Shown here one piece after another: positions 3,993 through 37,798 of a DNA stretch of 64,000 bases. The first letter of the stretch is position 1, and every line of letters begins with the position of its first letter. The stretch lies in the IMG/VR virus record IMGVR_UViG_3300042519_004024, positions 62,001 through 126,000 of that record, one strand, 5' to 3'. Both the position numbers and the translations under genes were made by a program. The notes beneath the pieces were generated by a model. The model was given only the letters and a program-made list of their open reading frames with translations, was not told where the DNA came from and did no database searches.

Positions 3993-6116
3993 TTATTTTA
4001 TTTTTATTTTCATTTTTGTTCCTATCTCATTTTTCTCACAAGTAATATTAAACTTGTGTTCCTCTAAAATTGCAACGCAAATATTTAACCCCAAACCTGT
4101 GCCTGATTCTGTTTGTCCTTCTTTTCTTATGTATGGTTTACGTAGGTGATCAAAATCTTGTTGTGTAATCCCTCTACCATTATCTTGAATGTATATATTA
4201 TTCTCATCAGAATAAATTTTAACGAACTTAGTGTCTGAATCATTATATTTTAAACCATTCCTAATAAGGTTATCTACCGCAGTACAGAATAACGCTTCGT
4301 TTACTTCTATTGTTGGTAAGTCCTCAATAATAACCTGACTACTATAAGCCGTAGATGATAGGTAATCAGATAGAATTGATTTTAAATTACATTCCGTTTT
4401 ATTTAAAACCACGTCTTTTTTAACTAAGTTGGTGAACTCATAAACGCCTTTATAAACTTTTTGTGAATGTTTAAGTCCTTCCTTAATCATTCTAATTGGT
4501 GCTTCTATTTTTAATGATGTAATATCTTCAGAACTTAATCTTCTTTCTAAAGAACTTAATCCTCTTGGCATGTAAGTATTTATACCTGAATGCATATCGT
4601 GTCTTAATATCTTTGCTGCGTGTTCTAAGTAAGTGTTTTTCTTTTCAATTTCTTTTCTTTGTTCATATGAATTGGTCACATCTGTTGCGATTTTCATAAC
4701 ACGATAAATTTTACCGTCTAAACCAACAATTGGGTTGTATGTTGCTTGTAGATGAACTAAAGTACCGTCTTTTTTAACTCTAGTGATTTCACCCGTAAAT
4801 AATACTCCTTCATTTAATTTTTTCCAAAAAAGTAAATATTCTTTACTTTTTGCATGATCCTCGTCTATAAAAATTCTGTGGTGTTTTCCAATTATTTCAT
4901 CCGGTGAAGAATAACCCATAGTATTTAAAAACAATTCATTAGCAAAAATAATGTTCCCTTGTAAATCAAACTCAATAACCGCATTAGATTTATTTATCGC
5001 ATTCATTCTATTACGGATCTCAACTTCTTTTCTTTTAAGTTCTGTGACATCTTGTCTAATTGATGAAAACCCTTCTAATTTACCATACTTATCAAAATTC
5101 GCTTTGATGTATGTATCAACATAGTATAACTCTCCTGACTTTCCTTTATTGGTTACAACGTCATTCCATATCTCACCTTTCATTACGGTTTCATACATCT
5201 TACCCCAATATCCATCAGGTTGTAATCCAGAGTTAACAACAATATGGTCCTTACCTTTAACCTCCTCTAAAGACCATCCTGAAACTTCTTCAAACTTATG
5301 GTTTACATAAGTTATTTTACCTTTGTTATCAGTAACTGAAACAATTGACGACTCGTTTAAAAACTTTTCAGTTTCTTTATTTCTTCTATTTAAATCGTTT
5401 CCTTCTTTAACAGAATAGGCAAACGTATATAAAGATGAAAGAAGTTGTGCAAAATCAACCTCAACTTTATCCCATTCACGAAGAGTTAAACTTTCAATAC
5501 ATATGACACCAATAGTTTCTCCTTTATATGTTATTGGAACATCCAACATTGATTTTACACCGAGTGGTTTTAAATACCCCTCAGTAAAACAAGAAGTCGC
5601 ACTATGTGTTTCAGCATCATTAGCAATAATGATTGGGTTAATTAATAGGGATAGGAAATATGGTTGGAAGTCTTTTTTATGTAGTTCAATGTTTTGGTAC
5701 CAAGTATCTTCTGATTTAATATATAATTGCTCACATATGATTGAACTTTTATCTTTATTATATAACCATATTGAACATCTATCAGCATTAATAGATTCTA
5801 TCACTTCTTTGGTTAAAACCTTAGCGCCTTCCGAAGTATTACCCTCATAAAATAAAGGATTGTGTGATTGAGATATAAGAGTTTCATTTAGTTTTTTAAC
5901 ATACTTACTCTGTTCTTTACCTTTTTTATTTCTTTTTATGTATTCAATAACAACGAAAGCAAAGAATGGTAAAAACGCCAAAAAACAAGTATAACCAAAA
6001 TACCCAATTTCGTCTATGTAATTTATAAAATGAAACACAAGTAGTGATTGGGTGGTAAAGAATGTTCCCATAATTATTACGGAAATAATCAAAGAAATTT
6101 TAGATAATTTTGTCAT
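3993..6116 (-). CDS. Sensor histidine kinase (2TM-GAF-PAS-PAS-HisKA-HATPase)
   Basis: Two N-terminal TMs; GAF; two PAS/PAC domains; H-box ILRHDMHSG; N-box DNLIRNGLKYN; G1 DNGRGI; G2 GTGLGL. Confidence 0.93.
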   Translation of the reverse strand: MTKLSKISLIISVIIMGTFFTTQSLLVFHFINYIDEIGYFGYTCFLAFLPFFAFVVIEYIKRNKKGKEQSKYVKKLNETLISQSHNPLFYEGNTSEGAKVLTKEVIESINADRCSIWLYNKDKSSIICEQLYIKSEDTWYQNIELHKKDFQPYFLSLLINPIIIANDAETHSATSCFTEGYLKPLGVKSMLDVPITYKGETIGVICIESLTLREWDKVEVDFAQLLSSLYTFAYSVKEGNDLNRRNKETEKFLNESSIVSVTDNKGKITYVNHKFEEVSGWSLEEVKGKDHIVVNSGLQPDGYWGKMYETVMKGEIWNDVVTNKGKSGELYYVDTYIKANFDKYGKLEGFSSIRQDVTELKRKEVEIRNRMNAINKSNAVIEFDLQGNIIFANELFLNTMGYSSPDEIIGKHHRIFIDEDHAKSKEYLLFWKKLNEGVLFTGEITRVKKDGTLVHLQATYNPIVGLDGKIYRVMKIATDVTNSYEQRKEIEKKNTYLEHAAKILRHDMHSGINTYMPRGLSSLERRLSSEDITSLKIEAPIRMIKEGLKHSQKVYKGVYEFTNLVKKDVVLNKTECNLKSILSDYLSSTAYSSQVIIEDLPTIEVNEALFCTAVDNLIRNGLKYNDSDTKFVKIYSDENNIYIQDNGRGITQQDFDHLRKPYIRKEGQTESGTGLGLNICVAILEEHKFNITCEKNEIGTKMKIKIK

Positions 6117-6120
6117 ATTA

Positions 6121-6175
6121 ATAAATATAACAAAATCTTAAAAACTATTTACTTTTCAAACTAAGACATATTTAT
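6121..6175. promoter_or_regulatory. Divergent pair of TATTTAT putative late promoters
   Basis: Minus copy 6121-6127 before the kinase and plus copy 6169-6175 before the YkuD-like gene; motif precedes more than 20 genes in sense orientation. Confidence 0.7.
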
Positions 6176-6191
6176 AAATAAAATTAATATT

Positions 6192-6800
6192 ATGAGTTAC
6201 ACAAGAGAACAAATTGAGACAGCCGTAAAGGCTAAAGGGTACAAATGGTTTGAGGATTCTTCAAACAAAAGTTATGACGTAAACATAGTTGGGGTTAGGA
6301 ATACTTCTCCAGCCGTTTATAGAAAGGTTACAAATGTTTTTGATGATCACTTAACCATTTCTTTTAAAGATGAAAAAGGTAGTTGGCAGTTCTACTGTTG
6401 GATGGGTACTTGTGATCCAGGTAAAAAAGGTGTACAACAATTCCATAACAGTAAAGGTGTTGCAAGACTTGTTCCGGGACAATACAGAGGTGTATGGAAA
6501 GTGGATAAACATCAAGGTAAGTATGATGCTCTTTGTCAAAGAAATGGTAACGTTACTGTATGGAGAGATGCTAACAAAGATTTAGTCTTTGAAGAAAAAG
6601 TAACTGATACAGGAATGTTTGGTATTAACATTCACAAAGCAGGTCAGGATTCACAATGGGTTGAAAATTGGTCTGAGGGTTGTCAGGTATTCAAAAGAGT
6701 TAAGGACTTTGATGAATTTATGTCAATATGTAAAAAAGCCGCAAAAATTCACGGAAACAAATTTTCTTACACTCTTTTAGAGTCGACAGATATTAAATAA
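6192..6800 (+). CDS. L,D-transpeptidase (YkuD)-like protein
   Basis: GINIHKAG-x8-WSEGCQVF resembles the His...S-x-G-C catalytic motif. Confidence 0.6.
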   Translation: MSYTREQIETAVKAKGYKWFEDSSNKSYDVNIVGVRNTSPAVYRKVTNVFDDHLTISFKDEKGSWQFYCWMGTCDPGKKGVQQFHNSKGVARLVPGQYRGVWKVDKHQGKYDALCQRNGNVTVWRDANKDLVFEEKVTDTGMFGINIHKAGQDSQWVENWSEGCQVFKRVKDFDEFMSICKKAAKIHGNKFSYTLLESTDIK

Positions 6801-6802
6801 AT

Positions 6803-6827
6803 AAAGGCTCTTAGGAGCCTTTTTTAT
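6803..6827 (+). terminator. Intrinsic terminator
   Basis: AAAGGCTC-TTAG-GAGCCTTT plus T-run after TAA 6800. Confidence 0.8.
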
Positions 6828-6903
6828 TATGTGTCAAATAGTAATATAAAAAAACACCCATAATCACAATGGGGGTTAAAACTGCAGCAATATACTCACT
6901 CAT
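6811..6903 (-). CDS. Putative 30-aa single-TM micropeptide
   Basis: Hand translation MSEYIAAVLTPIVIMGVFLYYYLTHNKKGS; short, so could be chance. Confidence 0.35.
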   Translation of the reverse strand: MSEYIAAVLTPIVIMGVFLYYYLTHNKKGS

Positions 6904-7003
6904 AACATTAATTTTAATATAATTATCCAAACAAAAAACAATCCAATCTATCAAATGAACAAGGTGGTTGTTTAAATTAACAACCACCCCATTTAGATTA
7001 TTA

Positions 7004-7738
7004 TTACACCATCTTCAACAAGATGTCAGCCGTTCCCTCCCAAGTTTTGATTTGAGATTTTGGAACCCAAAACTCCATCTCACCGATTTCGTCAACACGT
7101 TTCATGTACTCCAAACGGAAAGCTTCTGCTTGTGACTTGTCAGTGATGTAAGGAACCCCTACGTGACTTGCACAAATCTTACCAAGTCCTGTCAACATTG
7201 AAAACTCATCAGTAAGAGTTTTCATACAACAAGTACAAACAGAACCTCTTTTGATTGTAAGTTTAGCTGCGAATTTCACGGCTTTAGGTGAGATTGCAAG
7301 AACCTTAGTCACATCCAAAAGGATTGGGTTGAACTTCAATCCGTAAGTCTCTTTAAGAGATTGTCCCGCCTTACGTCCGATTTTGATTGTATCACCGATA
7401 GCCGGTACATTCAAATGAACAGTCTTTGCCTTGTCCTCTTCTTTTTGGATTTGGTTCAAAGCCGCTGAGATTTGTTTGTCAGACAACTTTCCGTACTTCT
7501 CAAGTTTACCTTTCAACTCGTTAACGAAAGAGTTCTCACCCTCGTATGCTGCGATTTTTTTCATATCGTCAGTCATCTCAACAGCTTTCGCCTCTACAGG
7601 GTTGTTGAAGATTTTTTCAACTGCGGCTCTTTGGTTAGCCGTCAATGATCCGTATTTAGTCATTGCGTCTTTCATTTTCAAGATGAAAGAATTTTTACCG
7701 TTGTAGTTTCTTACTTGTGTTGCGATGTCTGTTGTCAT
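7004..7738 (-). CDS. Early protein with duplicated ~30-aa module and C-terminal DUF6011-like Cys motif
   Basis: YNGKNSF...KYGSLTANQRAA and YEGENSF...KYGKLSDKQISAA; CTCCMKTLTDEFSMLTGLGKICA; host-type promoter upstream. Confidence 0.75.
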   Translation of the reverse strand: MTTDIATQVRNYNGKNSFILKMKDAMTKYGSLTANQRAAVEKIFNNPVEAKAVEMTDDMKKIAAYEGENSFVNELKGKLEKYGKLSDKQISAALNQIQKEEDKAKTVHLNVPAIGDTIKIGRKAGQSLKETYGLKFNPILLDVTKVLAISPKAVKFAAKLTIKRGSVCTCCMKTLTDEFSMLTGLGKICASHVGVPYITDKSQAEAFRLEYMKRVDEIGEMEFWVPKSQIKTWEGTADILLKMV

Positions 7739-7760
7739 ATCTTTTCCGTTTTGATTTATA

Positions 7761-7790
7761 CAAAGATATGAAAATTTTATTAATTACAAA
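7761..7790 (-). promoter_or_regulatory. Bacteroidota-type housekeeping promoter
   Basis: TTTG-N18-TATCTTTG on minus strand. Confidence 0.7.
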
Positions 7791-7803
7791 ATTTATTTCT
7801 GAT

Positions 7804-8310
7804 TTATTTATTTTTTAATTCAAGTAAATATTGATAAAGTTCGTCTTCTTGTCCCGGTGAGTATCCAACATATGATTTAACAATATTACCATATACATCT
7901 AAAATGAAAGTGTGTGGTATATTATTTACCCCTAAAGCTCTTTTTAAATCACCATTTACATCCAACCAAACTTCATAATCCCAAGAACTTCCTTTAACGT
8001 ATGTCTCTACAGAATTTTTAGTTTTCTCATCATCTACTGAAACAGCAATTAGTGTTACACCGGTACTATCAACCCACTGAGAGTAAACATCATTAATTGA
8101 ATTTAATTCTTTTTTACACGGAGCACACCAAGTAGCCCAAAAACTAATAACAACCGGCCCTTCATACTTTAATTTAGCAGTATTTACCCCTTCCCCATCT
8201 AAAGTTTTTATATAAACTGTTGGTAGTTTTCTTAATGTGGTATCAATTTGTGTTGATTGCCCAAAAAATAAGAATGGAATTAAAAATAGTGTTATCAAAA
8301 AAGACTTCAT
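7804..8310 (-). CDS. TlpA/ResA-family thioredoxin-like disulfide reductase
   Basis: Signal peptide; SFWATWCAPCKKEL; NNIPHTFILD. Confidence 0.9.
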   Translation of the reverse strand: MKSFLITLFLIPFLFFGQSTQIDTTLRKLPTVYIKTLDGEGVNTAKLKYEGPVVISFWATWCAPCKKELNSINDVYSQWVDSTGVTLIAVSVDDEKTKNSVETYVKGSSWDYEVWLDVNGDLKRALGVNNIPHTFILDVYGNIVKSYVGYSPGQEDELYQYLLELKNK

Positions 8311-8388
8311 AATTTTGTTTTTTTATTATAATAAATACTCTTGAGGTTACAGAGTTAATTAAATATTGAGCACCTCTATCTCATTTTG

Positions 8389-8461
8389 TTGTCAGTAAAG
8401 GATTCGAACCAATGACACGTCCCTAAAAAGGGATTGCTCTAACCAACTGAGCTAACTGACA
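8389..8461 (-). ncRNA. Aberrant tRNA-Lys-like RNA (6-nt anticodon loop)
   Basis: Perfect acceptor TGTCAGT/ACTGACA, canonical D arm, loop TTTTTA, two T-T mismatches in T stem. Confidence 0.7.
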
Positions 8462-8499
8462 TACCTAATAATAAAACTTTAGTTTTACATTGTCAAGTG

Positions 8500-8573
8500 T
8501 GGTCCTTGTTGGGATCGAACCAACCACCCACAGATTATGAGTCTGTTGCTCTAACCGAATGAGCTAAAGGACC
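8500..8573 (-). tRNA. tRNA-Ile2(CAT), lysidine type (elongator Met less likely)
   Basis: ACAGA-CTCATAA-TCTGT; C4:G69 and C5:G68 match TilS determinants. Confidence 0.85.
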
Positions 8574-8854: not shown

Positions 8855-8944
8855 ATTTTAAAGAGTTATTTTCTCTTTCTTACCATAAAGATAAACAAAA
8901 CAAATAATACAAATAATATTGGTGTCATAATTTTTTAATTTTTG

Positions 8945-9029
8945 TAGTCAGGACAGGAATCGAACCTGTACTAAACCTGGTATACACCATATTAAATTAG
9001 GAACGTGTTACCAATTACACCACCTGACT
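8945..9029 (-). ncRNA. tRNA-like RNA lacking a canonical anticodon arm
   Basis: Acceptor AGTCAGG/CCTGACT, D arm GTGT-AATTGGTA-ACAC, T arm ACAGG-TTCGATT-CCTGT; centre has TGGT-GTAT-ACCA hairpin. Confidence 0.75.
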
Positions 9030-9479: not shown

Positions 9480-9552
9480 TGGTGGACACTGTGGGAATCG
9501 AACCCATACGATCTGATTGCAAATCAGTCGACCTGCCGTCGGCATCAGGCCC
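9480..9552 (-). tRNA. tRNA-Ala(TGC), slightly atypical
   Basis: Loop TTTGCAA centred on TGC; G3:U70 and A73; encoded CCA; irregular acceptor/T junction. Confidence 0.8.
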
Positions 9553-9633: not shown

Positions 9634-9849
9634 TGTGACTACTCCGTTGGGATTTGTTTCGTCACTTTATCGTGAATGGGGTGATCAAACCCACTAACAT
9701 CACGGGTGTAAGTTTGTATGTCAAACTATCTCCACAAAACATTAGTTTTTATCTCTAAAACTAAAAAAACGACTTGACACCTTGTAACCCCCCTTTTAAG
9801 TGCGTGTTACCATCCTTTCTCAAGTAGAATATACTGCTTACACTCCCGT
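9634..9849 (-). ncRNA. Two-domain structured ncRNA candidate
   Basis: ACGGG(A)GTGTAAG/CTTACACCCGT closes 9702-9849; inner GTAAC/GTTAC and TAGTTTT/AAAACTA; second domain closed by GTGAT/GTCAC. Confidence 0.6.
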
Positions 9850-9929
9850 ACTGACGGTGGGATTCGAACCCACGTTTTAAACTTACCGCTACAGGCATAG
9901 ATGATATAAGCATCCACTGGTACATCAGC
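9849..9929 (-). ncRNA. tRNA-like RNA with rearranged D/anticodon region
   Basis: Acceptor GCTGATG/CGTCAGT; perfect T arm GTGGG-TTCGAAT-CCCAC; no normal D arm. Confidence 0.65.
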
Positions 9930-9935
9930 ATTTAG

Positions 9936-10007
9936 TTGCGGGGGCAGGATTCGAACCTGCGACCTACGGGTTATGAGCCCGCCGAGCTACCACTGCTCTA
10001 CCCCGCG
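9936..10007 (-). tRNA. tRNA-fMet(CAT)
   Basis: C1xA72 mismatch, GGG/CCC anticodon stem, loop CTCATAA. Confidence 0.95.
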
Positions 10008-10014
10008 ATATTTG

Positions 10015-10089
10015 TGGTGAGGGAATGGAATCGAACCATCGGCACAAGAGTTTTCTGTCTCCTTGCTCTACCTACTGAGCTACCGCACC
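10015..10089 (-). ncRNA. Aberrant tRNA-Phe-like RNA (8-nt anticodon loop)
   Basis: Phe-like body; stem AGGAG/CTCTT with loop ACAGAAAA; extra base and mismatch in acceptor stem. Confidence 0.7.
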
Positions 10090-13063: not shown

Positions 13064-14020
13064 TTAAAAACCAAAGTTTAATCTTAAATCGTCTAATTTA
13101 ATTACCTCGGTAACTTCAACAAAATTATCTTCCATACCAACACTATCTCTTCTATCCTCCATTGTCATCTCATCATCTTCAATATATCTTACATGAATTT
13201 CAAGATTAAATGGAACAATTTCTTCATTTGATTCAATTTCATTAAAATCTTCCACTGAAAAATATTTACCTTCGTATTGACTGAACCCATCTCCAATCAT
13301 TATGTTGAAACTTTTTCTTATATTATACCTGTAATCGTCAGTTTCAACTTCTCCATTTCCATCACAATTACTACAAGTACTTGATCCATACCCATCACAC
13401 CATCCACATTCTTCATCTCCAGCACCTTCACATGATGGACATTCAAAATTACCTGTCCCACCACAATCACTACATCTATCTTCACCGGTTCCATCACAAT
13501 GAACACACTCTACCTCCACTTCAACCTCATCACCTTCATCATCTTCTTCAGTATCGGTTTCACTTCCTCTACCATCACAATAACGACATTCTTCATTACC
13601 TGATCCATCACAAGTATCACAATCTATAGTTGTTTCTCCATCACAACTACGACATTCTCGTCTACCTGACCCATCACAGTGTTCACATTGTTCATCACCT
13701 GAACCGTAACAGTAATCACATTCATTTTTAATTACTTCAGTGTCTTCATACAATTCAATAACTGCAACGTATAGGTTCATTATTATTCCTTCCATTGCAA
13801 CAGGATCCATTTTTCTATTTAAAATAAAATATGTCATAACACATACTTTAATTCTTTCTTGTGTGGAATTGACTTTTGATAATAATAATTCGGCTAAATG
13901 ATCACTTTTTATGATATTTATTATTTTTGAAATACCGATAAATACGTTTCCGTATTCGGTTTTCATTAAATTAGCTAAATTATTAGCTATTGAGTATAAT
14001 TTTTTAAATTCAGGTGACAT
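13064..14020 (-). CDS. Protein with ten CxxCxGxG zinc-finger repeats
   Basis: Ten motifs at 11-aa spacing, 5+5 around an acidic loop; no J domain. Confidence 0.85.
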   Translation of the reverse strand: MSPEFKKLYSIANNLANLMKTEYGNVFIGISKIINIIKSDHLAELLLSKVNSTQERIKVCVMTYFILNRKMDPVAMEGIIMNLYVAVIELYEDTEVIKNECDYCYGSGDEQCEHCDGSGRRECRSCDGETTIDCDTCDGSGNEECRYCDGRGSETDTEEDDEGDEVEVEVECVHCDGTGEDRCSDCGGTGNFECPSCEGAGDEECGWCDGYGSSTCSNCDGNGEVETDDYRYNIRKSFNIMIGDGFSQYEGKYFSVEDFNEIESNEEIVPFNLEIHVRYIEDDEMTMEDRRDSVGMEDNFVEVTEVIKLDDLRLNFGF

Positions 14021-14953: not shown

Positions 14954-14964
14954 ATTTATTTATG

Positions 14965-15036
14965 AGCTCAGGGAGGGATTCGAACCCACATACTACGGTT
15001 TTGCAGACCGAGACTTTACCAATCAGACACCTGAGC
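14965..15036 (-). tRNA. tRNA-Cys(GCA)
   Basis: TCGGT-CTGCAAA-ACCGT, U73. Confidence 0.9.
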
Positions 15037-15038
15037 AA

Positions 15039-15494
15039 TTAACGGCAGTGATGGTCTGCCGCTCTTGTTGCAATTTGATTGTCAGGTTTAATATTTGCTT
15101 TATAACCTAACGACGTTGCCCACCCAACAACGGGTTGTACAAGTTTTGAACTAAAGTGTTTTTCTTCACAGTTATAATCCAAATCTATTTCAACCTTAAC
15201 TTTTACTTTTTGAGTTAACCATTCGGCAACCTCGATTGAATAATCAGCTTCATTCCAAAGACGTGTCCATTTGTCTTTTATTTTTTTCACTTTTTGTTTG
15301 TGTAGGATGTAGTGAACACCTCTGTTTCCGTATCTGTATGCTATCACTGTAACATATACGGTACTTCTTCTATGGTTTTGTGAATCCGTTCCAATATGTA
15401 TTTCAGCCCATGGACATTCCTTTAAAACATCTAAGGTGTGTTTTACCACATCAGGGATTGCTTCACCATTAATTGTTCTAAATACTCTGTTCAT
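15039..15494 (-). CDS. RNase H-like YkuK-family protein
   Basis: IHIGTDSQ, RLWNEAD, EIDLDYN, ATRAAD acidic motifs. Confidence 0.85.
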   Translation of the reverse strand: MNRVFRTINGEAIPDVVKHTLDVLKECPWAEIHIGTDSQNHRRSTVYVTVIAYRYGNRGVHYILHKQKVKKIKDKWTRLWNEADYSIEVAEWLTQKVKVKVEIDLDYNCEEKHFSSKLVQPVVGWATSLGYKANIKPDNQIATRAADHHCR

Positions 15495-16802: not shown

Positions 16803-16805
16803 TTG

Positions 16806-16879
16806 TGTGTATGATGGGGGTCGAACCCATGACCTCTTGAACCACAATCAAGCACTCTACCAACTGAGCTACATACACC
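16806..16879 (-). tRNA. tRNA-His(GTG)
   Basis: CTTGA-TTGTGGT-TCAAG; encoded G-1 opposite A73. Confidence 0.92.
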
Positions 16880-16884
16880 ATATT

Positions 16885-16954
16885 GTCCCGTGTAATGGTA
16901 TCGAACCACTCTAAAGTCGGATATGAGCCAACTTTGATCCCTGATCACACGGGA
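16885..16954 (-). tRNA. Non-canonical CAT tRNA with 8-bp acceptor and 8-bp anticodon stems (elongator Met candidate)
   Basis: TCCCGTGT/ACACGGGA; mini D arm ATC-AGG-GAT; AAAGTTGG-CTCATAT-CCGACTTT; T arm AGTGG-TTCGATA-CCATT. Confidence 0.7.
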
Positions 16955-16958
16955 GTTG

Positions 16959-17047
16959 AGGAAAACAGTGGTAACGATCCACAATCGGTTTCTCACCGAT
17001 CACATTGTTTAGCAAACAAGTCCCGTCGCCTTCAGGGATTACTTTCC
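16959..17047 (-). tRNA. tRNA-Ser(GCT)
   Basis: Loop TTGCTAA; variable arm ATCGGT/ACCGAT; T loop ATCGTTA; U73. Confidence 0.85.
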
Positions 17048-17106
17048 ATAGAGTGTGGTAGGACTGCAGTTCCTTGGGGATCCCACACTATTTATTCCCC
17101 TTTTTG

Positions 17107-36664: not shown

Positions 36665-36823
36665 ATGGAACAAAAAAAGGCAACACAAGTTACGGGATGT
36701 AAACAGTGTAAAAAAGGATTAAATTTAACTCAGAAGTCATTAATTGTATTATCTATTTATGTTTTTTTTGCTGCTATCTATGGTACAGTACAAATAGTTA
36801 AAGACTTATACAACTTCTTTTAA
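36665..36823 (+). CDS. Small membrane protein with CxxC, 52 aa
   Basis: Hand translation MEQKKATQVTGCKQCKKGLNLTQKSLIVLSIYVFFAAIYGTVQIVKDLYNFF. Confidence 0.55.
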   Translation: MEQKKATQVTGCKQCKKGLNLTQKSLIVLSIYVFFAAIYGTVQIVKDLYNFF

Positions 36824-37798
36824 TATATCCTTTAAATTATTCTTTACCTCATCATTTAATTCATAATCGTTGGTGATTGTTAATTTTACATAAAAGTCTC
36901 CGCTACCGTGAGCATCTTTATAACCTTTTTTAACTAACCTCAATGGTTTGTCTGAATTTAAGTTTTTAGGCATACTAATCATCAAATTACCATCTGGGTG
37001 TGGTAATTTAATTTGTTTTTCAGTTAAAATTTCTAAAACATTTAATTTTAAACTATAAACAAGATCCCTACCTACTTTATCAAAATCATCTTTTTTTATT
37101 AATTCAACCTTCAATATTAAATCTCCACGATTATTAGTCATTCTACCATAGTCACCCTTTGTTGGTATCCTCAAGAAATCACCATTATCTACATTTTTTG
37201 GTATGCTAACTAATAAATTTTCCTTTTCTTTAACCATCCCATGTCCACTACATGTATTACACTTTTTAGTAATCACACTTCCGCTCCCACCACAATAATC
37301 ACATGACATGTTAAAAATTTGTTGAAACATCCCCGTTCCCATTTTTTTCATAACATATCCTTGTCCGTTACACACATTACATACCGATCTATCCCCACCA
37401 TTACCATTACAAGGTTTACAGGAAACTAAATAATCATAACTTAGATTTTTTTGTACACCAAAATAAGATTCAATGGGGGTTATCTCTAGATTTATCACTT
37501 TGTCGGGAACCTTTGCGGTTTGTTTTCTACCACCATTCATCATTTCTTCAAACATAGAATGTACGTCAAACCCTCCACCCATATTACCCATAAATGGGTT
37601 ATTTTTTCTGTGATCGTAATCTCTTCTCTTACTCTCGTCACCTATTATGTCATAAGCTTCAGCAATATCTTTAAATTTTTCCTCACCATCAGGGTTTACA
37701 TCTGGATGATATTGTTTACTTAATTTTCTATATGACTTTTTTATTTCGTCCTGAGAAGCCTTTTCATCAACCTCAAGTATATCATAATAATTTTTCAT
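36806..37798 (-). CDS. dnaJ: DnaJ chaperone
   Basis: J domain with HPD, G/F-rich linker, four CxxCxGxG, C-terminal domain. Confidence 0.93.
   Translation of the reverse strand: MKNYYDILEVDEKASQDEIKKSYRKLSKQYHPDVNPDGEEKFKDIAEAYDIIGDESKRRDYDHRKNNPFMGNMGGGFDVHSMFEEMMNGGRKQTAKVPDKVINLEITPIESYFGVQKNLSYDYLVSCKPCNGNGGDRSVCNVCNGQGYVMKKMGTGMFQQIFNMSCDYCGGSGSVITKKCNTCSGHGMVKEKENLLVSIPKNVDNGDFLRIPTKGDYGRMTNNRGDLILKVELIKKDDFDKVGRDLVYSLKLNVLEILTEKQIKLPHPDGNLMISMPKNLNSDKPLRLVKKGYKDAHGSGDFYVKLTITNDYELNDEVKNNLKDILKEVV

What the first reader, a model, noticed from the sequence alone, without database searches (positions are those of the whole stretch)
16885..16954. New-shape CAU tRNA (8-bp acceptor, 8-bp anticodon stem, 3-nt D loop), the only elongator-Met candidate here
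SEEN: 70 nt with acceptor TCCCGTGT/ACACGGGA, 1-nt linker, ATC-AGG-GAT D arm, AAAGTTGG-CTCATAT-CCGACTTT, 2-nt variable loop, normal T arm, C73. All stems pair, including G:U, which argues against decay. The other two CAT tRNAs have fMet and Ile2 features. KNOWN: tRNA-Sec has an 8-bp acceptor; tRNA-Pyl has a long anticodon stem and tiny D loop; MetRS reads mainly the anticodon. INFERENCE: a functional tRNA of unusual architecture, possibly nuclease-resistant or TilS-evading.
Basis: partly seen in the sequence, partly recalled or inferred. Interest (0 to 1): 0.8.

Follow-up and report, generated by a model that had tools for sequence, protein, structure and literature searches.

The report
Phage CAU tRNA with miniature D-arm
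A freshwater giant-phage tRNA cluster carries a conserved, strangely shaped tRNA gene (tiny D arm, 7-bp anticodon stem, CAU anticodon), probably the phage's internal-methionine tRNA; such a shape has been described only for mitochondrial and pyrrolysine tRNAs, not for bacterial or phage ones.

Summary
The 70-nt element is real (minus strand, 16954-16885) and folds as described. Comparison with 39 distinct homologues from about 55 uncultured phage contigs corrects its anatomy. The conserved shape is a 7-bp acceptor, no linker, a 4-bp D stem with a 3-5-nt loop that always contains GG, a 7-bp anticodon stem, a 3-nt variable loop, a normal T arm and A73-C74. Covariation is very strong: 96% of cells paired, 18 of 23 pairs changed on both sides, slid controls 31-52%. 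Invariant are the D-loop GG, U33-CAU-A37-U38, U55-C56, A73 and C74. The gene occupies a fixed slot between tRNA-Ser(GCU) and tRNA-His, 5 nt from each. The Ser gene is itself missed by ARAGORN and Rfam. The window's other two CAU genes are an initiator and an Ile2-like tRNA, so this is the only candidate for elongator Met, and published acceptor-stem rules do not contradict that. No aminoacylation or end-processing evidence exists, so an Ile2-type or decoy role remains possible. No member was found in cellular genomes, GenBank phages, Rfam or the searchable literature. Verdict: a real new structural variant of tRNA with unproven function.

The parts
16885..16954 (-). The non-canonical CAU tRNA gene with its flanks: U-1 (16954), mature body C1..A73 (16953-16886), C74 (16885)
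   Evidence: Sequence; MFE cloverleaf z = -3.7; model R2 91.4 bits; ARAGORN -ps95 tRNA-Met(cat) 16955-16885
16947..16953 (-). Acceptor stem 5' strand CCCGUGU (pairs with 16887-16893)
   Evidence: 7 pairs, 6 with changes on both sides, 96.5% paired in 33 sequences
16936..16946 (-). Miniature D arm: stem GAUC/GAUC (16946-16943 with 16939-16936), loop AGG (16942-16940). No nucleotides 8-9 linker
   Evidence: All 4 pairs covary; GG invariant 33/33
16914..16934 (-). Anticodon arm: 7-bp stem AAGUUGG/CCGACUU, loop CUCAUAU (16927-16921), anticodon CAU 16925-16923
   Evidence: 5 of 7 pairs covary, including the two extra pairs beyond the canonical 5. Third pair from the loop is U.G or G.U in 28 of 33. 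Loop U33-C-A-U-A37-U38 invariant 33/33
16911..16913 (-). Short variable loop UAG; A26-like base at 16935 can pair with U at 16913 in this copy only
   Evidence: That pair forms in 10 of 18 homologues
16894..16910 (-). T arm AGUGG-UUCGAUA-CCAUU
   Evidence: 3 of 5 pairs covary; U55, C56 invariant 33/33; U54 and A58 32/33; R57
16886..16893 (-). Acceptor 3' strand ACACGGG (16893-16887) plus discriminator A73 (16886)
   Evidence: A73 and C74 invariant 33/33; same tail on 17 of 24 tRNAs of the window
16958..17047 (-). tRNA-Ser(GCU) gene immediately upstream (5-nt gap counted from its discriminator at 16959), co-transcribed neighbour; missed by ARAGORN default and Rfam
   Evidence: One base different from the ARAGORN-called Ser(gct) of L042; ARAGORN -ps95 calls it 17047-16958; RNA-library contigs span Ser plus this element
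16805..16879 (-). tRNA-His(GUG) with encoded G-1, 5 nt downstream
   Evidence: ARAGORN and Rfam 70.4 bits; fixed gene order in relatives

Best explanation
It is a genuine phage-encoded tRNA of non-canonical architecture: 7-bp acceptor, 4-bp D stem with a 3-5-nt GG loop and no 8-9 linker, 7-bp anticodon stem, 3-nt variable loop, normal T arm, A73. It belongs to a family carried by large uncultured freshwater phages, probably of Bacteroidota.

Origin (inferred): a canonical CAU tRNA lost about 5 nt from the 5' half of the D arm. From the D-loop GG onward every spacing is still canonical. The former D-stem 3' strand and position 26 re-paired with the variable loop to lengthen the anticodon stem, and a mini hairpin formed from what was left.

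How it works (inferred):
- It is transcribed in the polycistronic cluster between tRNA-Ser(GCU) and tRNA-His.
- RNase P cuts after U-1. The 3' end is trimmed to A73-C74 and completed to CCA, as for the neighbouring tRNAs.
- The loop GG contacts U55/C56 at the elbow, and the two extra stem pairs stand in for the lost tertiary layers.
- Host MetRS charges it through CAU plus A73, and it decodes internal AUG codons. It thereby fills the elongator-Met slot that no canonical gene in the cluster fills.
For: Shown:
- The cloverleaf is the MFE.
- 33 distinct sequences are 96.0% paired, against 31-52% when the partners are slid. 18 of 23 pairs changed on both sides, and 0 of 500 shuffles reach the observed values.
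- All four D-stem pairs and both extra anticodon-stem pairs covary.
- Invariant in 33/33: D-loop GG, U33, C34-A35-U36, A37, U38, U55, C56, A73, C74; A58 in 32/33.
- 1:72 is paired in 31 of 33 sequences, so the acceptor end is elongator-like.
- The gene has a fixed syntenic slot and the cluster's usual U-1 / N73-C74 flanks.
- Subfamilies A and B occur with both versions of the neighbouring Ser gene, so they are interchangeable cassettes.
- ARAGORN calls it tRNA-Met in three relatives at default and here at -ps95.
- Relatives' copies, carrying the compensatory pair, occur in contigs of three metatranscriptomes.
- The other CAU genes are an initiator and an Ile2-like gene.
- C3-G70 is present in 33/33, and the Ile(CAU)-typical C4-G69 and C5-G68 are absent (rules from PMC1635315).
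- The distant member L046 has CCA after A73, in a phage where 12 of 13 tRNA calls have CCA at their 3' end.

Against: - There is no direct evidence of mature ends, CCA addition or aminoacylation. The RNA contigs are joined Ser+element(+His) pieces of relatives at low depth, and could be precursors or DNA carry-over.
- C3-G70 also occurs in some tRNAIle(CAU), for example in E. coli, so the acceptor rule only fails to exclude Met.
- Subfamily B and L086 most resemble the phage tRNA-Ile(UAU): G1.U72, the UGGG/CCCU T stem and U38.
- Subfamily B has a weak T stem (3 G-C pairs plus U.U).
- Some relatives lack the gene cleanly (L020) or carry a truncated copy (L036), so it is dispensable.
- A stem 2 bp longer than normal could misplace the anticodon relative to the acceptor end for MetRS and the ribosome. 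The argument that geometry is preserved is inference only.
Confidence: 0.5

Rival explanations
1. It is an AUA decoder of the tRNA-Ile2 type. C34 is converted to lysidine by host TilS, IleRS then charges it, and it reads the abundant AUA codon.
For: - AUA is frequent (30 per 1000 codons, 39% of Ile codons).
- Subfamily B and L086 are most similar to the phage's own tRNA-Ile(UAU): same G1.U72-C2-C3-G4-A5 acceptor start, the same UGGG/CCCU T stem with a U.U, and the same rare U38 loop.
- A second non-canonical gene with a 7-bp anticodon stem in the same phages has anticodon UAU.
Against: - It lacks the C4-G69 and C5-G68 pairs frequent in tRNAIle(CAU), which are TilS determinants in E. coli. It has G4-C69 in 31 of 33 sequences (PMC1635315).
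- The cluster already has a canonical Ile2-like CAU gene, and in many relatives a UAU gene as well, whereas no other elongator-Met gene exists.
- TilS contacts both the anticodon and the acceptor stem, so a reshaped body is a poor fit (general knowledge, not tested).
Confidence: 0.13
2. It is a tRNA-like RNA that does not take part in decoding. It could be a decoy or sponge for a host factor that recognises the CAU anticodon arm (an anticodon nuclease, a toxin acting on Met/fMet tRNA, or TilS), or a processing signal within the polycistronic transcript.
For: - The most conserved part is the anticodon arm: a 17-nt identical stretch is shared even with the distant L046.
- The body departs from what the translation machinery normally sees.
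- The cluster contains several other tRNA-like genes with 6- or 8-nt anticodon loops.
- Phage tRNAs are known to counter tRNA-targeting defences through anticodon-loop changes (PMC10264068).
- Rfam's tRNA model gives no hit.
Against: - Features that a decoy of the anticodon arm would not need are invariant or tightly kept: A73, C74, a fully paired 7-bp acceptor with paired 1:72, D-loop GG and T-loop U55-C56.
- The L046 version has an encoded CCA.
- The gene fills the one empty amino-acid slot of an otherwise almost complete tRNA set.
Confidence: 0.27
3. It is a second initiator-type tRNA used by the phage for start codons.
For: G30-G31/C39-C40 are invariant, and subfamily B fits the R29-G30-G31..Y39-C40-Y41 initiator signature. 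C3-G70 and A73 are present. Many phage initiator-like tRNAs share the U38 loop.
Against: 1:72 is paired in 31 of 33 sequences, and is a strong C-G in subfamily A including the window. It has C2-G71, not G2-C71. 29:41 is a wobble, not G-C. The window already has a textbook initiator 7 kb away.
Confidence: 0.05
4. It is a decaying tRNA pseudogene (a deletion derivative) with no function.
For: It looks like a canonical tRNA with a ~5-nt deletion in the D arm. Default tRNA finders miss it. It is lost or truncated in some relatives.
Against: Compensatory changes in all four helices across 39 distinct sequences, invariant loop positions, and conservation across sequences that differ in most stem positions.
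Confidence: 0.02

Closest known systems
Mammalian mitochondrial tRNA-Ser(UCN) ('type I' mt-tRNA)
   Same: Reduced acceptor-to-D connector, small D loop, lengthened anticodon stem, 3-nt variable region, and retained G18-G19 and T-loop UUC so that an L shape is kept (PMC7609411). This is the closest match in design logic.
   Different: The mitochondrial tRNA has a 6-bp anticodon stem and a 1-nt linker. The phage family has 7 bp and no linker, a still smaller D loop (3-5 nt), a CAU anticodon, and would have to work with unadapted bacterial cytosolic enzymes.
tRNAPyl, especially Methanomethylophilus alvus tRNAPyl
   Same: No nucleotide between acceptor and D stem, a 4-nt D loop, a lengthened anticodon stem that contains a conserved irregularity (an unpaired A there; a conserved U.G/G.U or A.C here), and a tiny variable loop (PMC7609411).
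   Different: tRNAPyl has anticodon CUA, lacks G18-G19 and T-Psi-C, has a 6-bp stem and depends on a dedicated PylRS. The phage family keeps GG and UUC, has CAU, and no dedicated synthetase is seen nearby.
D-armless mitochondrial tRNAs and the synthetic 'mini HisT'
   Same: They show that aaRS, EF-Tu and the bacterial ribosome can use tRNAs without a normal D arm, and that stability against PNPase is the limiting factor (PMC11551756). The window's second odd gene (9848-9929) and L046 are of this D-replacement-loop kind.
   Different: The finding keeps a small, covarying D hairpin with GG, so it probably retains an elbow contact rather than a Y shape. It is natural and phage-borne.
allo-tRNAs and (8/4)/(9/3) tRNAs of bacteria and phages (Mukai et al. 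2017)
   Same: Non-canonical cloverleaves found in metagenomes, some inside phage tRNA clusters (PMC5389517).
   Different: Those change the acceptor/T-stem split (8/4, 9/3) and have long variable arms. This family has the standard 7/5 acceptor branch and changes the D and anticodon branch instead.
Canonical bacterial elongator tRNA-Met
   Same: CAU anticodon, A37, A73, C3-G70, paired 1:72, standard 7/5 acceptor-T minihelix and T loop.
   Different: No U8/A14, no 4-bp D stem with an 8-10-nt loop, no 26.44 hinge, 7-bp rather than 5-bp anticodon stem, U38 rather than A38, and no score with the Rfam tRNA model.

Membership tests
tRNA (general; Rfam RF00005 / ARAGORN definition) | Detected by the family covariance model at its gathering score | tested here: not met
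   No RF00005 hit at E<=10 in a 13-kb or a 186-nt scan. ARAGORN default: no call here, but calls in L003, L011 and L043, and here at -ps95.
tRNA (general; Rfam RF00005 / ARAGORN definition) | 7-bp acceptor plus 5-bp T stem, T loop U54-U55-C56-R57-A58, 7-nt anticodon loop with U33 and purine 37, single discriminator base | tested here: met
   All present and conserved in 33 sequences.
tRNA (general; Rfam RF00005 / ARAGORN definition) | Canonical core: 2-nt 8-9 connector, D stem with 7-11-nt loop, 5-bp anticodon stem, 4-5-nt or long variable region | tested here: not met
   0-nt connector, 3-5-nt D loop, 7-bp anticodon stem, 3-nt variable loop, all supported by covariation.
tRNA (general; Rfam RF00005 / ARAGORN definition) | Mature CCA end and aminoacylation | not testable with these tools
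   Only contigs of RNA libraries were available. Encoded CCA occurs in L046 (meaningful context) and in L003 and L213 (chance level).
Elongator tRNA-Met | CAU anticodon, A73, C3-G70, paired 1:72; absence of the Ile(CAU) marks G3/A3/C70/T70, C4-G69 and C5-G68 (PMC1635315) | tested here: met
   CAU and A73 33/33; C3-G70 33/33; 1:72 paired 31/33; G4-C69 31/33; 5:68 is A-U or U-A. These features are compatible with Met but do not prove it.
Elongator tRNA-Met | Charged by MetRS and used at internal AUG | not testable with these tools
   Needs biochemistry.
tRNA-Ile2 (CAU, lysidine) | C4-G69 / C5-G68 or non-C3-G70 acceptor marks; closeness to the Ile(CAU) profile | tested here: not met
   None of the marks is present. 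The window's other CAU gene (8499-8573) does carry them and matches an E. coli CAU gene annotated tRNA-Ile 61/76. Determinants vary between phyla, so this is not decisive.
Initiator tRNA-fMet | 1:72 mismatch or weak pair, G2-C71, three G-C pairs 29-31:39-41, A11-U24 | tested here: not met
   C1-G72 here; C2-G71; 29:41 is U.G. The true initiator is at 9935-10007.
tRNA-Sec (8/5 or 9/4 acceptor branch) | 8-bp (bacterial) acceptor stem, long variable arm, UCA anticodon | tested here: not met
   The 8th pair is not conserved and never covaries. There is no long variable arm, and the anticodon is CAU.
tRNAPyl | CUA anticodon, no G18-G19 / T-Psi-C, 6-bp anticodon stem, PylRS partner | tested here: not met
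   CAU anticodon; GG and UUC invariant; 7-bp stem. No aaRS-like gene among the 27 ORFs scanned against Pfam.

The most novel reading that the evidence does not exclude
Large freshwater phages carry a set of structurally minimised AUN-box tRNAs: this CAU gene with a collapsed D-arm core, and a companion UAU gene with no D arm at all. Both would be fully active in bacterial cytosolic translation, and their altered bodies would make them poor substrates for host enzymes that read tRNA shape (TilS, tRNA-targeting defence nucleases or toxins). They would be the first natural non-organellar tRNAs lacking the canonical core, and a new counter-defence or host-independence strategy.
Probability: 0.2. 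Interest if true: 0.88.

Novelty: new variant of a known kind. Interest (0 to 1): 0.68.

Why it matters
A 2024 study still states that all known bacterial and cytosolic tRNAs have the canonical cloverleaf, and that arm-reduced tRNAs occur naturally only in mitochondria (PMC11551756). A conserved, covariation-supported family of phage tRNA genes with a miniature D arm and a 7-bp anticodon stem would be a natural counter-example operating with ordinary bacterial MetRS, EF-Tu, RNase P and ribosomes.

- It gives tRNA biologists a natural test case for how much of the tertiary core is needed.
- It offers a naturally orthogonal-looking scaffold for genetic-code engineering.
- It shows that standard tRNA finders (Rfam, ARAGORN default) under-count phage tRNAs. 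Here they miss this gene, the neighbouring tRNA-Ser(GCU) and at least one further tRNA-like gene.
- It may also bear on the arms race around tRNA-targeting defences.

Tried and rejected
1. **8-bp acceptor / C73 and 8-bp anticodon stem:** tested by pair counts and rejected as family features.
2. **'Conserved upstream spacer' as part of a larger ncRNA:** it is a tRNA-Ser(GCU) gene plus a small hairpin.
3. **TilS-like neighbour:** ORF 6192-6800 has a 28-30-residue match to the edge of the PP-loop/TilS N domain (E 0.005-0.01; 15.9 bits against a cut-off of 93.6). There is no room for the domain and no PDB support. Rejected.
4. **RNA contig ends at 16885 as a mature 3' end:** at least one is an alignment artefact, because the relative's 5-nt spacer differs, and contigs cannot show ends. 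Not used as evidence.
5. **Encoded CCA in the main family:** 2 of 39 distinct sequences, which is chance level.
6. **Loose pattern scans:** My length filter used loose 6-of-7 acceptor matching and is unreliable apart from L213.
7. **Parent tRNA:** global alignment against 364 distinct tRNAs of the loci gave only weak scores, so no clear parent was found.
8. **GenBank phages:** five queries (window, subfamily B, L086, L176, L177) gave no member.
9. **Cellular genomes:** one architecture-pattern scan gave no member, best 47.8 bits. L196 was an unrelated tRNA-Pro-derived repeat array.
10. **MITE-like reading (terminal inverted repeats = acceptor stem):** rejected because the internal helices covary and the loops are invariant.
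11. **Not done:** RNA 3D modelling (no tool), a metagenome-contig scan, and whole-genome co-occurrence with aaRS or TilS genes (only loci of 20 kb or less were available).

Full report
**What is at the coordinates.** All 24 ARAGORN tRNA calls in the window lie on the minus strand between 8.4 and 20.2 kb. Its minimum-free-energy fold is that cloverleaf (-26.8 kcal/mol; z = -3.7; none of 200 shuffles as stable). ARAGORN at default settings and the Rfam tRNA model do not report it, even when only 186 nt are scanned. ARAGORN reports it as tRNA-Met(cat) when its threshold is lowered by 5%.

**Genome context.** The window is about 30% G+C with phage-like gene packing. It carries phage-family hits such as an SbcC-like nuclease, DNA methylases and a virion protein with an SprB repeat. 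It has no close relative among GenBank phages. It is almost identical to a 214-kb IMG/VR contig (L001/L047). DNA runs that hold it are lake and freshwater metagenomes. The SprB repeat and the nearest clusters of a neighbouring AhpC/TlpA-like protein point to Bacteroidota as host, which is a lead only.

**Homologues.** I fetched 36 related loci using a 169-aa ORF that lies 650 bp from the element. The exact 17-nt anticodon arm recurs in 14 viral contigs. A covariance model built from close copies (R1) found divergent copies at the same position in the gene order. A second model (R2) separates the family (at least 64.9 bits) from every canonical tRNA (at most 49.1 bits). Two scans with patterns that encode the architecture gave 39 stretches, about 33 of them true members, and 22 stretches, all true. 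In total there are 39 distinct sequences on roughly 55 viral contigs, several of them 250-300 kb. The same pattern found no member in one genome per 185,579 bacterial and archaeal species. Five BLAST queries found none in GenBank phages.

**Structure test.** On 33 distinct sequences aligned to the model, 96.0% of cells form a standard pair, against 31-52% when the 3' partners are slid by 1-3 columns. 18 of 23 pairs have changes on both sides, and no shuffle out of 500 reaches the observed values (18-sequence version). Support by helix is as follows:
- acceptor stem: 6 of 7 pairs covary
- D stem: 4 of 4
- anticodon stem: 5 of 7, including both pairs beyond the canonical five
- T stem: 3 of 5

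The alignment was fitted to the model, which favours the structure somewhat. However, the compensatory changes are visible in the raw sequences.

- The proposed eighth acceptor pair is U:A in 14 of 18 sequences and unpaired in 4. It never covaries because the A is invariant.
- U at -1 is the rule in this cluster (15 of 24 tRNAs, against about 30% T on that strand). 22 of 24 tRNAs end N73-C, and 17 of them end exactly A-C.
- In the distant member L046, whose phage has CCA at the 3' end of 12 of 13 tRNA calls, CCA follows that same A.
- Hence the acceptor is 7 bp with A73-C74.
- The proposed eighth anticodon-stem pair forms in only 10 of 18 sequences.

The family architecture is therefore 7 / 4 (loop of 3-5 nt) / 7 / 5, with no 8-9 connector and a 3-nt variable loop.

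**Conserved single positions.** Invariant in 33 of 33 are the D-loop GG, U33, C34-A35-U36, A37, U38, U55, C56, A73 and C74. U54 and A58 are 32 of 33, and position 57 is always a purine. The third pair from the anticodon loop is U.G (20) or G.U (8) and is Watson-Crick only three times. One clade also has A.C at the next pair. I read this as a conserved weak point in the long stem, comparable to the unpaired base in the 6-bp stem of M. alvus tRNAPyl (PMC7609411). That reading is inference.

**Origin (inference from spacing).** From the D-loop GG to the 3' end every segment has canonical length: 7 nt to the 5-bp stem, the 7-nt loop, the 5-bp stem, 5 nt, then the T arm and acceptor. Only 5 nt, instead of about 10, lie between the acceptor and the GG. 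The element thus looks like a canonical tRNA that lost about 5 nt of the 5' D-arm region. The former positions 24-26 then paired with 44-46 and a mini hairpin formed. A canonical D stem cannot be drawn.

**Neighbourhood.** The 'conserved spacer' upstream is a tRNA-Ser(GCU) gene (17047-16958), one base different from a copy ARAGORN calls in L042. In the window it is missed by ARAGORN default and by Rfam. Five nucleotides separate the Ser discriminator from the element, and five more separate the element from G-1 of tRNA-His. The order ...Tyr-Asn-Ile(GAU)-Ser(GCU)-element-His-Arg(ACG)... is kept in relatives. The two subfamilies of the element (A, as here; B, 72 nt with D loop AGGU) occur with both versions of the Ser gene in all four combinations, so they behave as interchangeable cassettes. 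L020 and L022 lack the element cleanly, with Ser running into His. L036 lost its 3' half together with tRNA-His. The element is therefore a discrete, dispensable gene, like other phage tRNA genes.

**Expression.** Only Logan contigs were available. In three metatranscriptomes and one cDNA library flagged as probably DNA, short contigs of an L042-type relative cover the element together with the Ser gene. They carry the compensatory pair 16892 G>A / 16948 C>T, and in one run the contig extends into His. This shows presence in RNA-derived libraries as unprocessed or DNA-like joined pieces. It says nothing about mature ends or charging. The apparent end at 16885 is at least partly an alignment artefact.

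**Identity.**
- The window's CAU gene at 9935-10007 is a textbook initiator (C1.A72, GGG/CCC).
- The one at 8499-8573 matches an E. coli CAU-anticodon gene annotated tRNA-Ile at 61/76, against 57/77 for metT. It has C4-G69 and C5-G68, and its relatives of the GGACC type have A3-T70.
- Silva et al. list G3/A3/C70/T70 as excluding Met, and C4-G69 / C5-G68 as frequent in tRNAIle(CAU) (PMC1635315).
- The odd family has C3-G70 in 33 of 33, G4-C69 in 31 of 33, and no C4-G69 or C5-G68. It is therefore compatible with Met and lacks the Ile marks.
- Counting the missed Ser gene, the cluster covers every amino acid except Ala and elongator Met. No canonical elongator tRNAMet appears in any related locus.
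- Against this, subfamily B and L086 resemble the phages' tRNA-Ile(UAU) in the acceptor (G1.U72, C2, C3, G4, A5), T stem and U38, and determinants differ between phyla. AUA (30 per 1000) and internal AUG (21 per 1000) are both in demand.

I therefore favour elongator Met but cannot exclude an Ile2-type role.

**Feasibility and comparison.** mt-tRNASer(UCN) and tRNAPyl function with short connectors, small D loops and 6-bp anticodon stems (PMC7609411). [quoted passage not shown] The same paper states that all known bacterial tRNAs are canonical (PMC11551756). Non-canonical 8/4 and 9/3 tRNAs are known in phages, but those alter the other branch of the molecule (PMC5389517). Full-text searches found no description of a miniature-D-arm or long-anticodon-stem tRNA in phages or bacteria. 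Phage tRNAs with changed anticodon loops that escape anticodon nucleases are known (PMC10264068), but nothing here links this element to a nuclease or to TilS. A TilS-like hit in ORF 6192-6800 was spurious.

**Verdict.** This is a real, selected, tRNA-derived gene family with a new architecture, confined so far to uncultured freshwater phages. It is most likely a working elongator tRNAMet (about 0.5). An Ile2-type decoder (about 0.13), a non-decoding tRNA mimic (about 0.27) and a second initiator (about 0.05) are the live alternatives, and a pseudogene reading is effectively excluded.

Noticed in passing
window 9848-9929 (- strand): A second non-canonical AUN-box tRNA-like gene sits in the slot where relatives have a canonical tRNA-Ile(UAU). 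It reads acceptor GCUGAUG, only a 5-nt connector (UACCA) instead of a D arm, a 7-bp anticodon stem, loop CUUAUAU (anticodon UAU, U38), a 23-nt variable region, a normal T arm, and A73-C74. It is conserved in at least 8 distinct variants with compensatory changes in the acceptor and T stems. ARAGORN misses it, and Rfam sees only a tmRNA-3'-end-like piece.
   Followed up: partly
window 16958-17047 (- strand): A tRNA-Ser(GCU) gene with T loop AUCGUUA and two G.U pairs in the acceptor is missed by ARAGORN default and by Rfam tRNA even in a 186-nt scan. ARAGORN calls it at -ps95 and in relatives. Two sequence versions of it circulate among related phages.
   Followed up: yes
window 17053-17088 (- strand): A hairpin GUGUGGG...CCACAC lies just upstream of the Ser gene. 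It is conserved with compensatory changes in L002, L041 and L020. It could be a processing or terminator-like element inside the tRNA cluster.
   Followed up: no
window 8388-8461 and 8944-9029 (- strand): Two tRNA genes score well with Rfam (47.7 and 46.8 bits) but have 6-nt anticodon loops. One is Lys(UUU)-like with loop UUUUUA. The other is a long-variable-arm type with loop AUUUAA (Lys or stop-reading?). ARAGORN also reports 6-nt-loop genes in the relatives L002, L014 and L036, and I compared the sequence only for the 8388-8461 type in L002. Other relatives have 8-nt-loop (cuua) or (ac) versions.
   Followed up: partly
window 10015-10089 (- strand): A tRNA found by Rfam (39.6 bits) but not by ARAGORN has an 8-nt anticodon loop, ACAGAAAA, and an encoded CCA.
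   Followed up: no
window 9483-9552 (- strand): A weak tRNA-like hit (Rfam 18.6 bits) has a GCA (Cys) anticodon arm, a good T arm, an encoded CCA, and an aberrant D region and acceptor. A canonical tRNA-Cys lies at 14964-15036.
   Followed up: no
window 3993-6116 (- strand): A phage-encoded 707-aa protein carries GAF, PAS and histidine-kinase ATPase domains, that is, a sensor kinase. This is unusual cargo next to the tRNA cluster.
   Followed up: no
window 36806-37798 and 13064-14020 (- strand): There is a full DnaJ homologue (J domain, zinc-finger domain, C-terminal domain), and a second protein with only the DnaJ CXXCXGXG zinc-finger domain inside the tRNA cluster.
   Followed up: no
window 15039-15494 (- strand): An RNase H-like (PF04308) protein is encoded between tRNA genes. 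A role in tRNA or RNA processing is conceivable but untested.
   Followed up: no
L046 5513-5581: A distant CAU gene from a 235-kb phage contig has the same 17-nt anticodon arm, a 7-8-bp anticodon stem and an encoded CCA, but no D hairpin at all (a 14-nt replacement loop). It lacks both the D-loop GG and T-loop C56, so the elbow contact appears to have been lost on both sides together.
   Followed up: partly
L196 (Lewinellaceae MAG) about 5960-7870: A tandem array of at least 13 near-identical tRNA-Pro-derived repeats, about 124 nt apart, with irregular anticodon loops. It was fetched by chance through a T-loop match and is unrelated to the finding.
   Followed up: no
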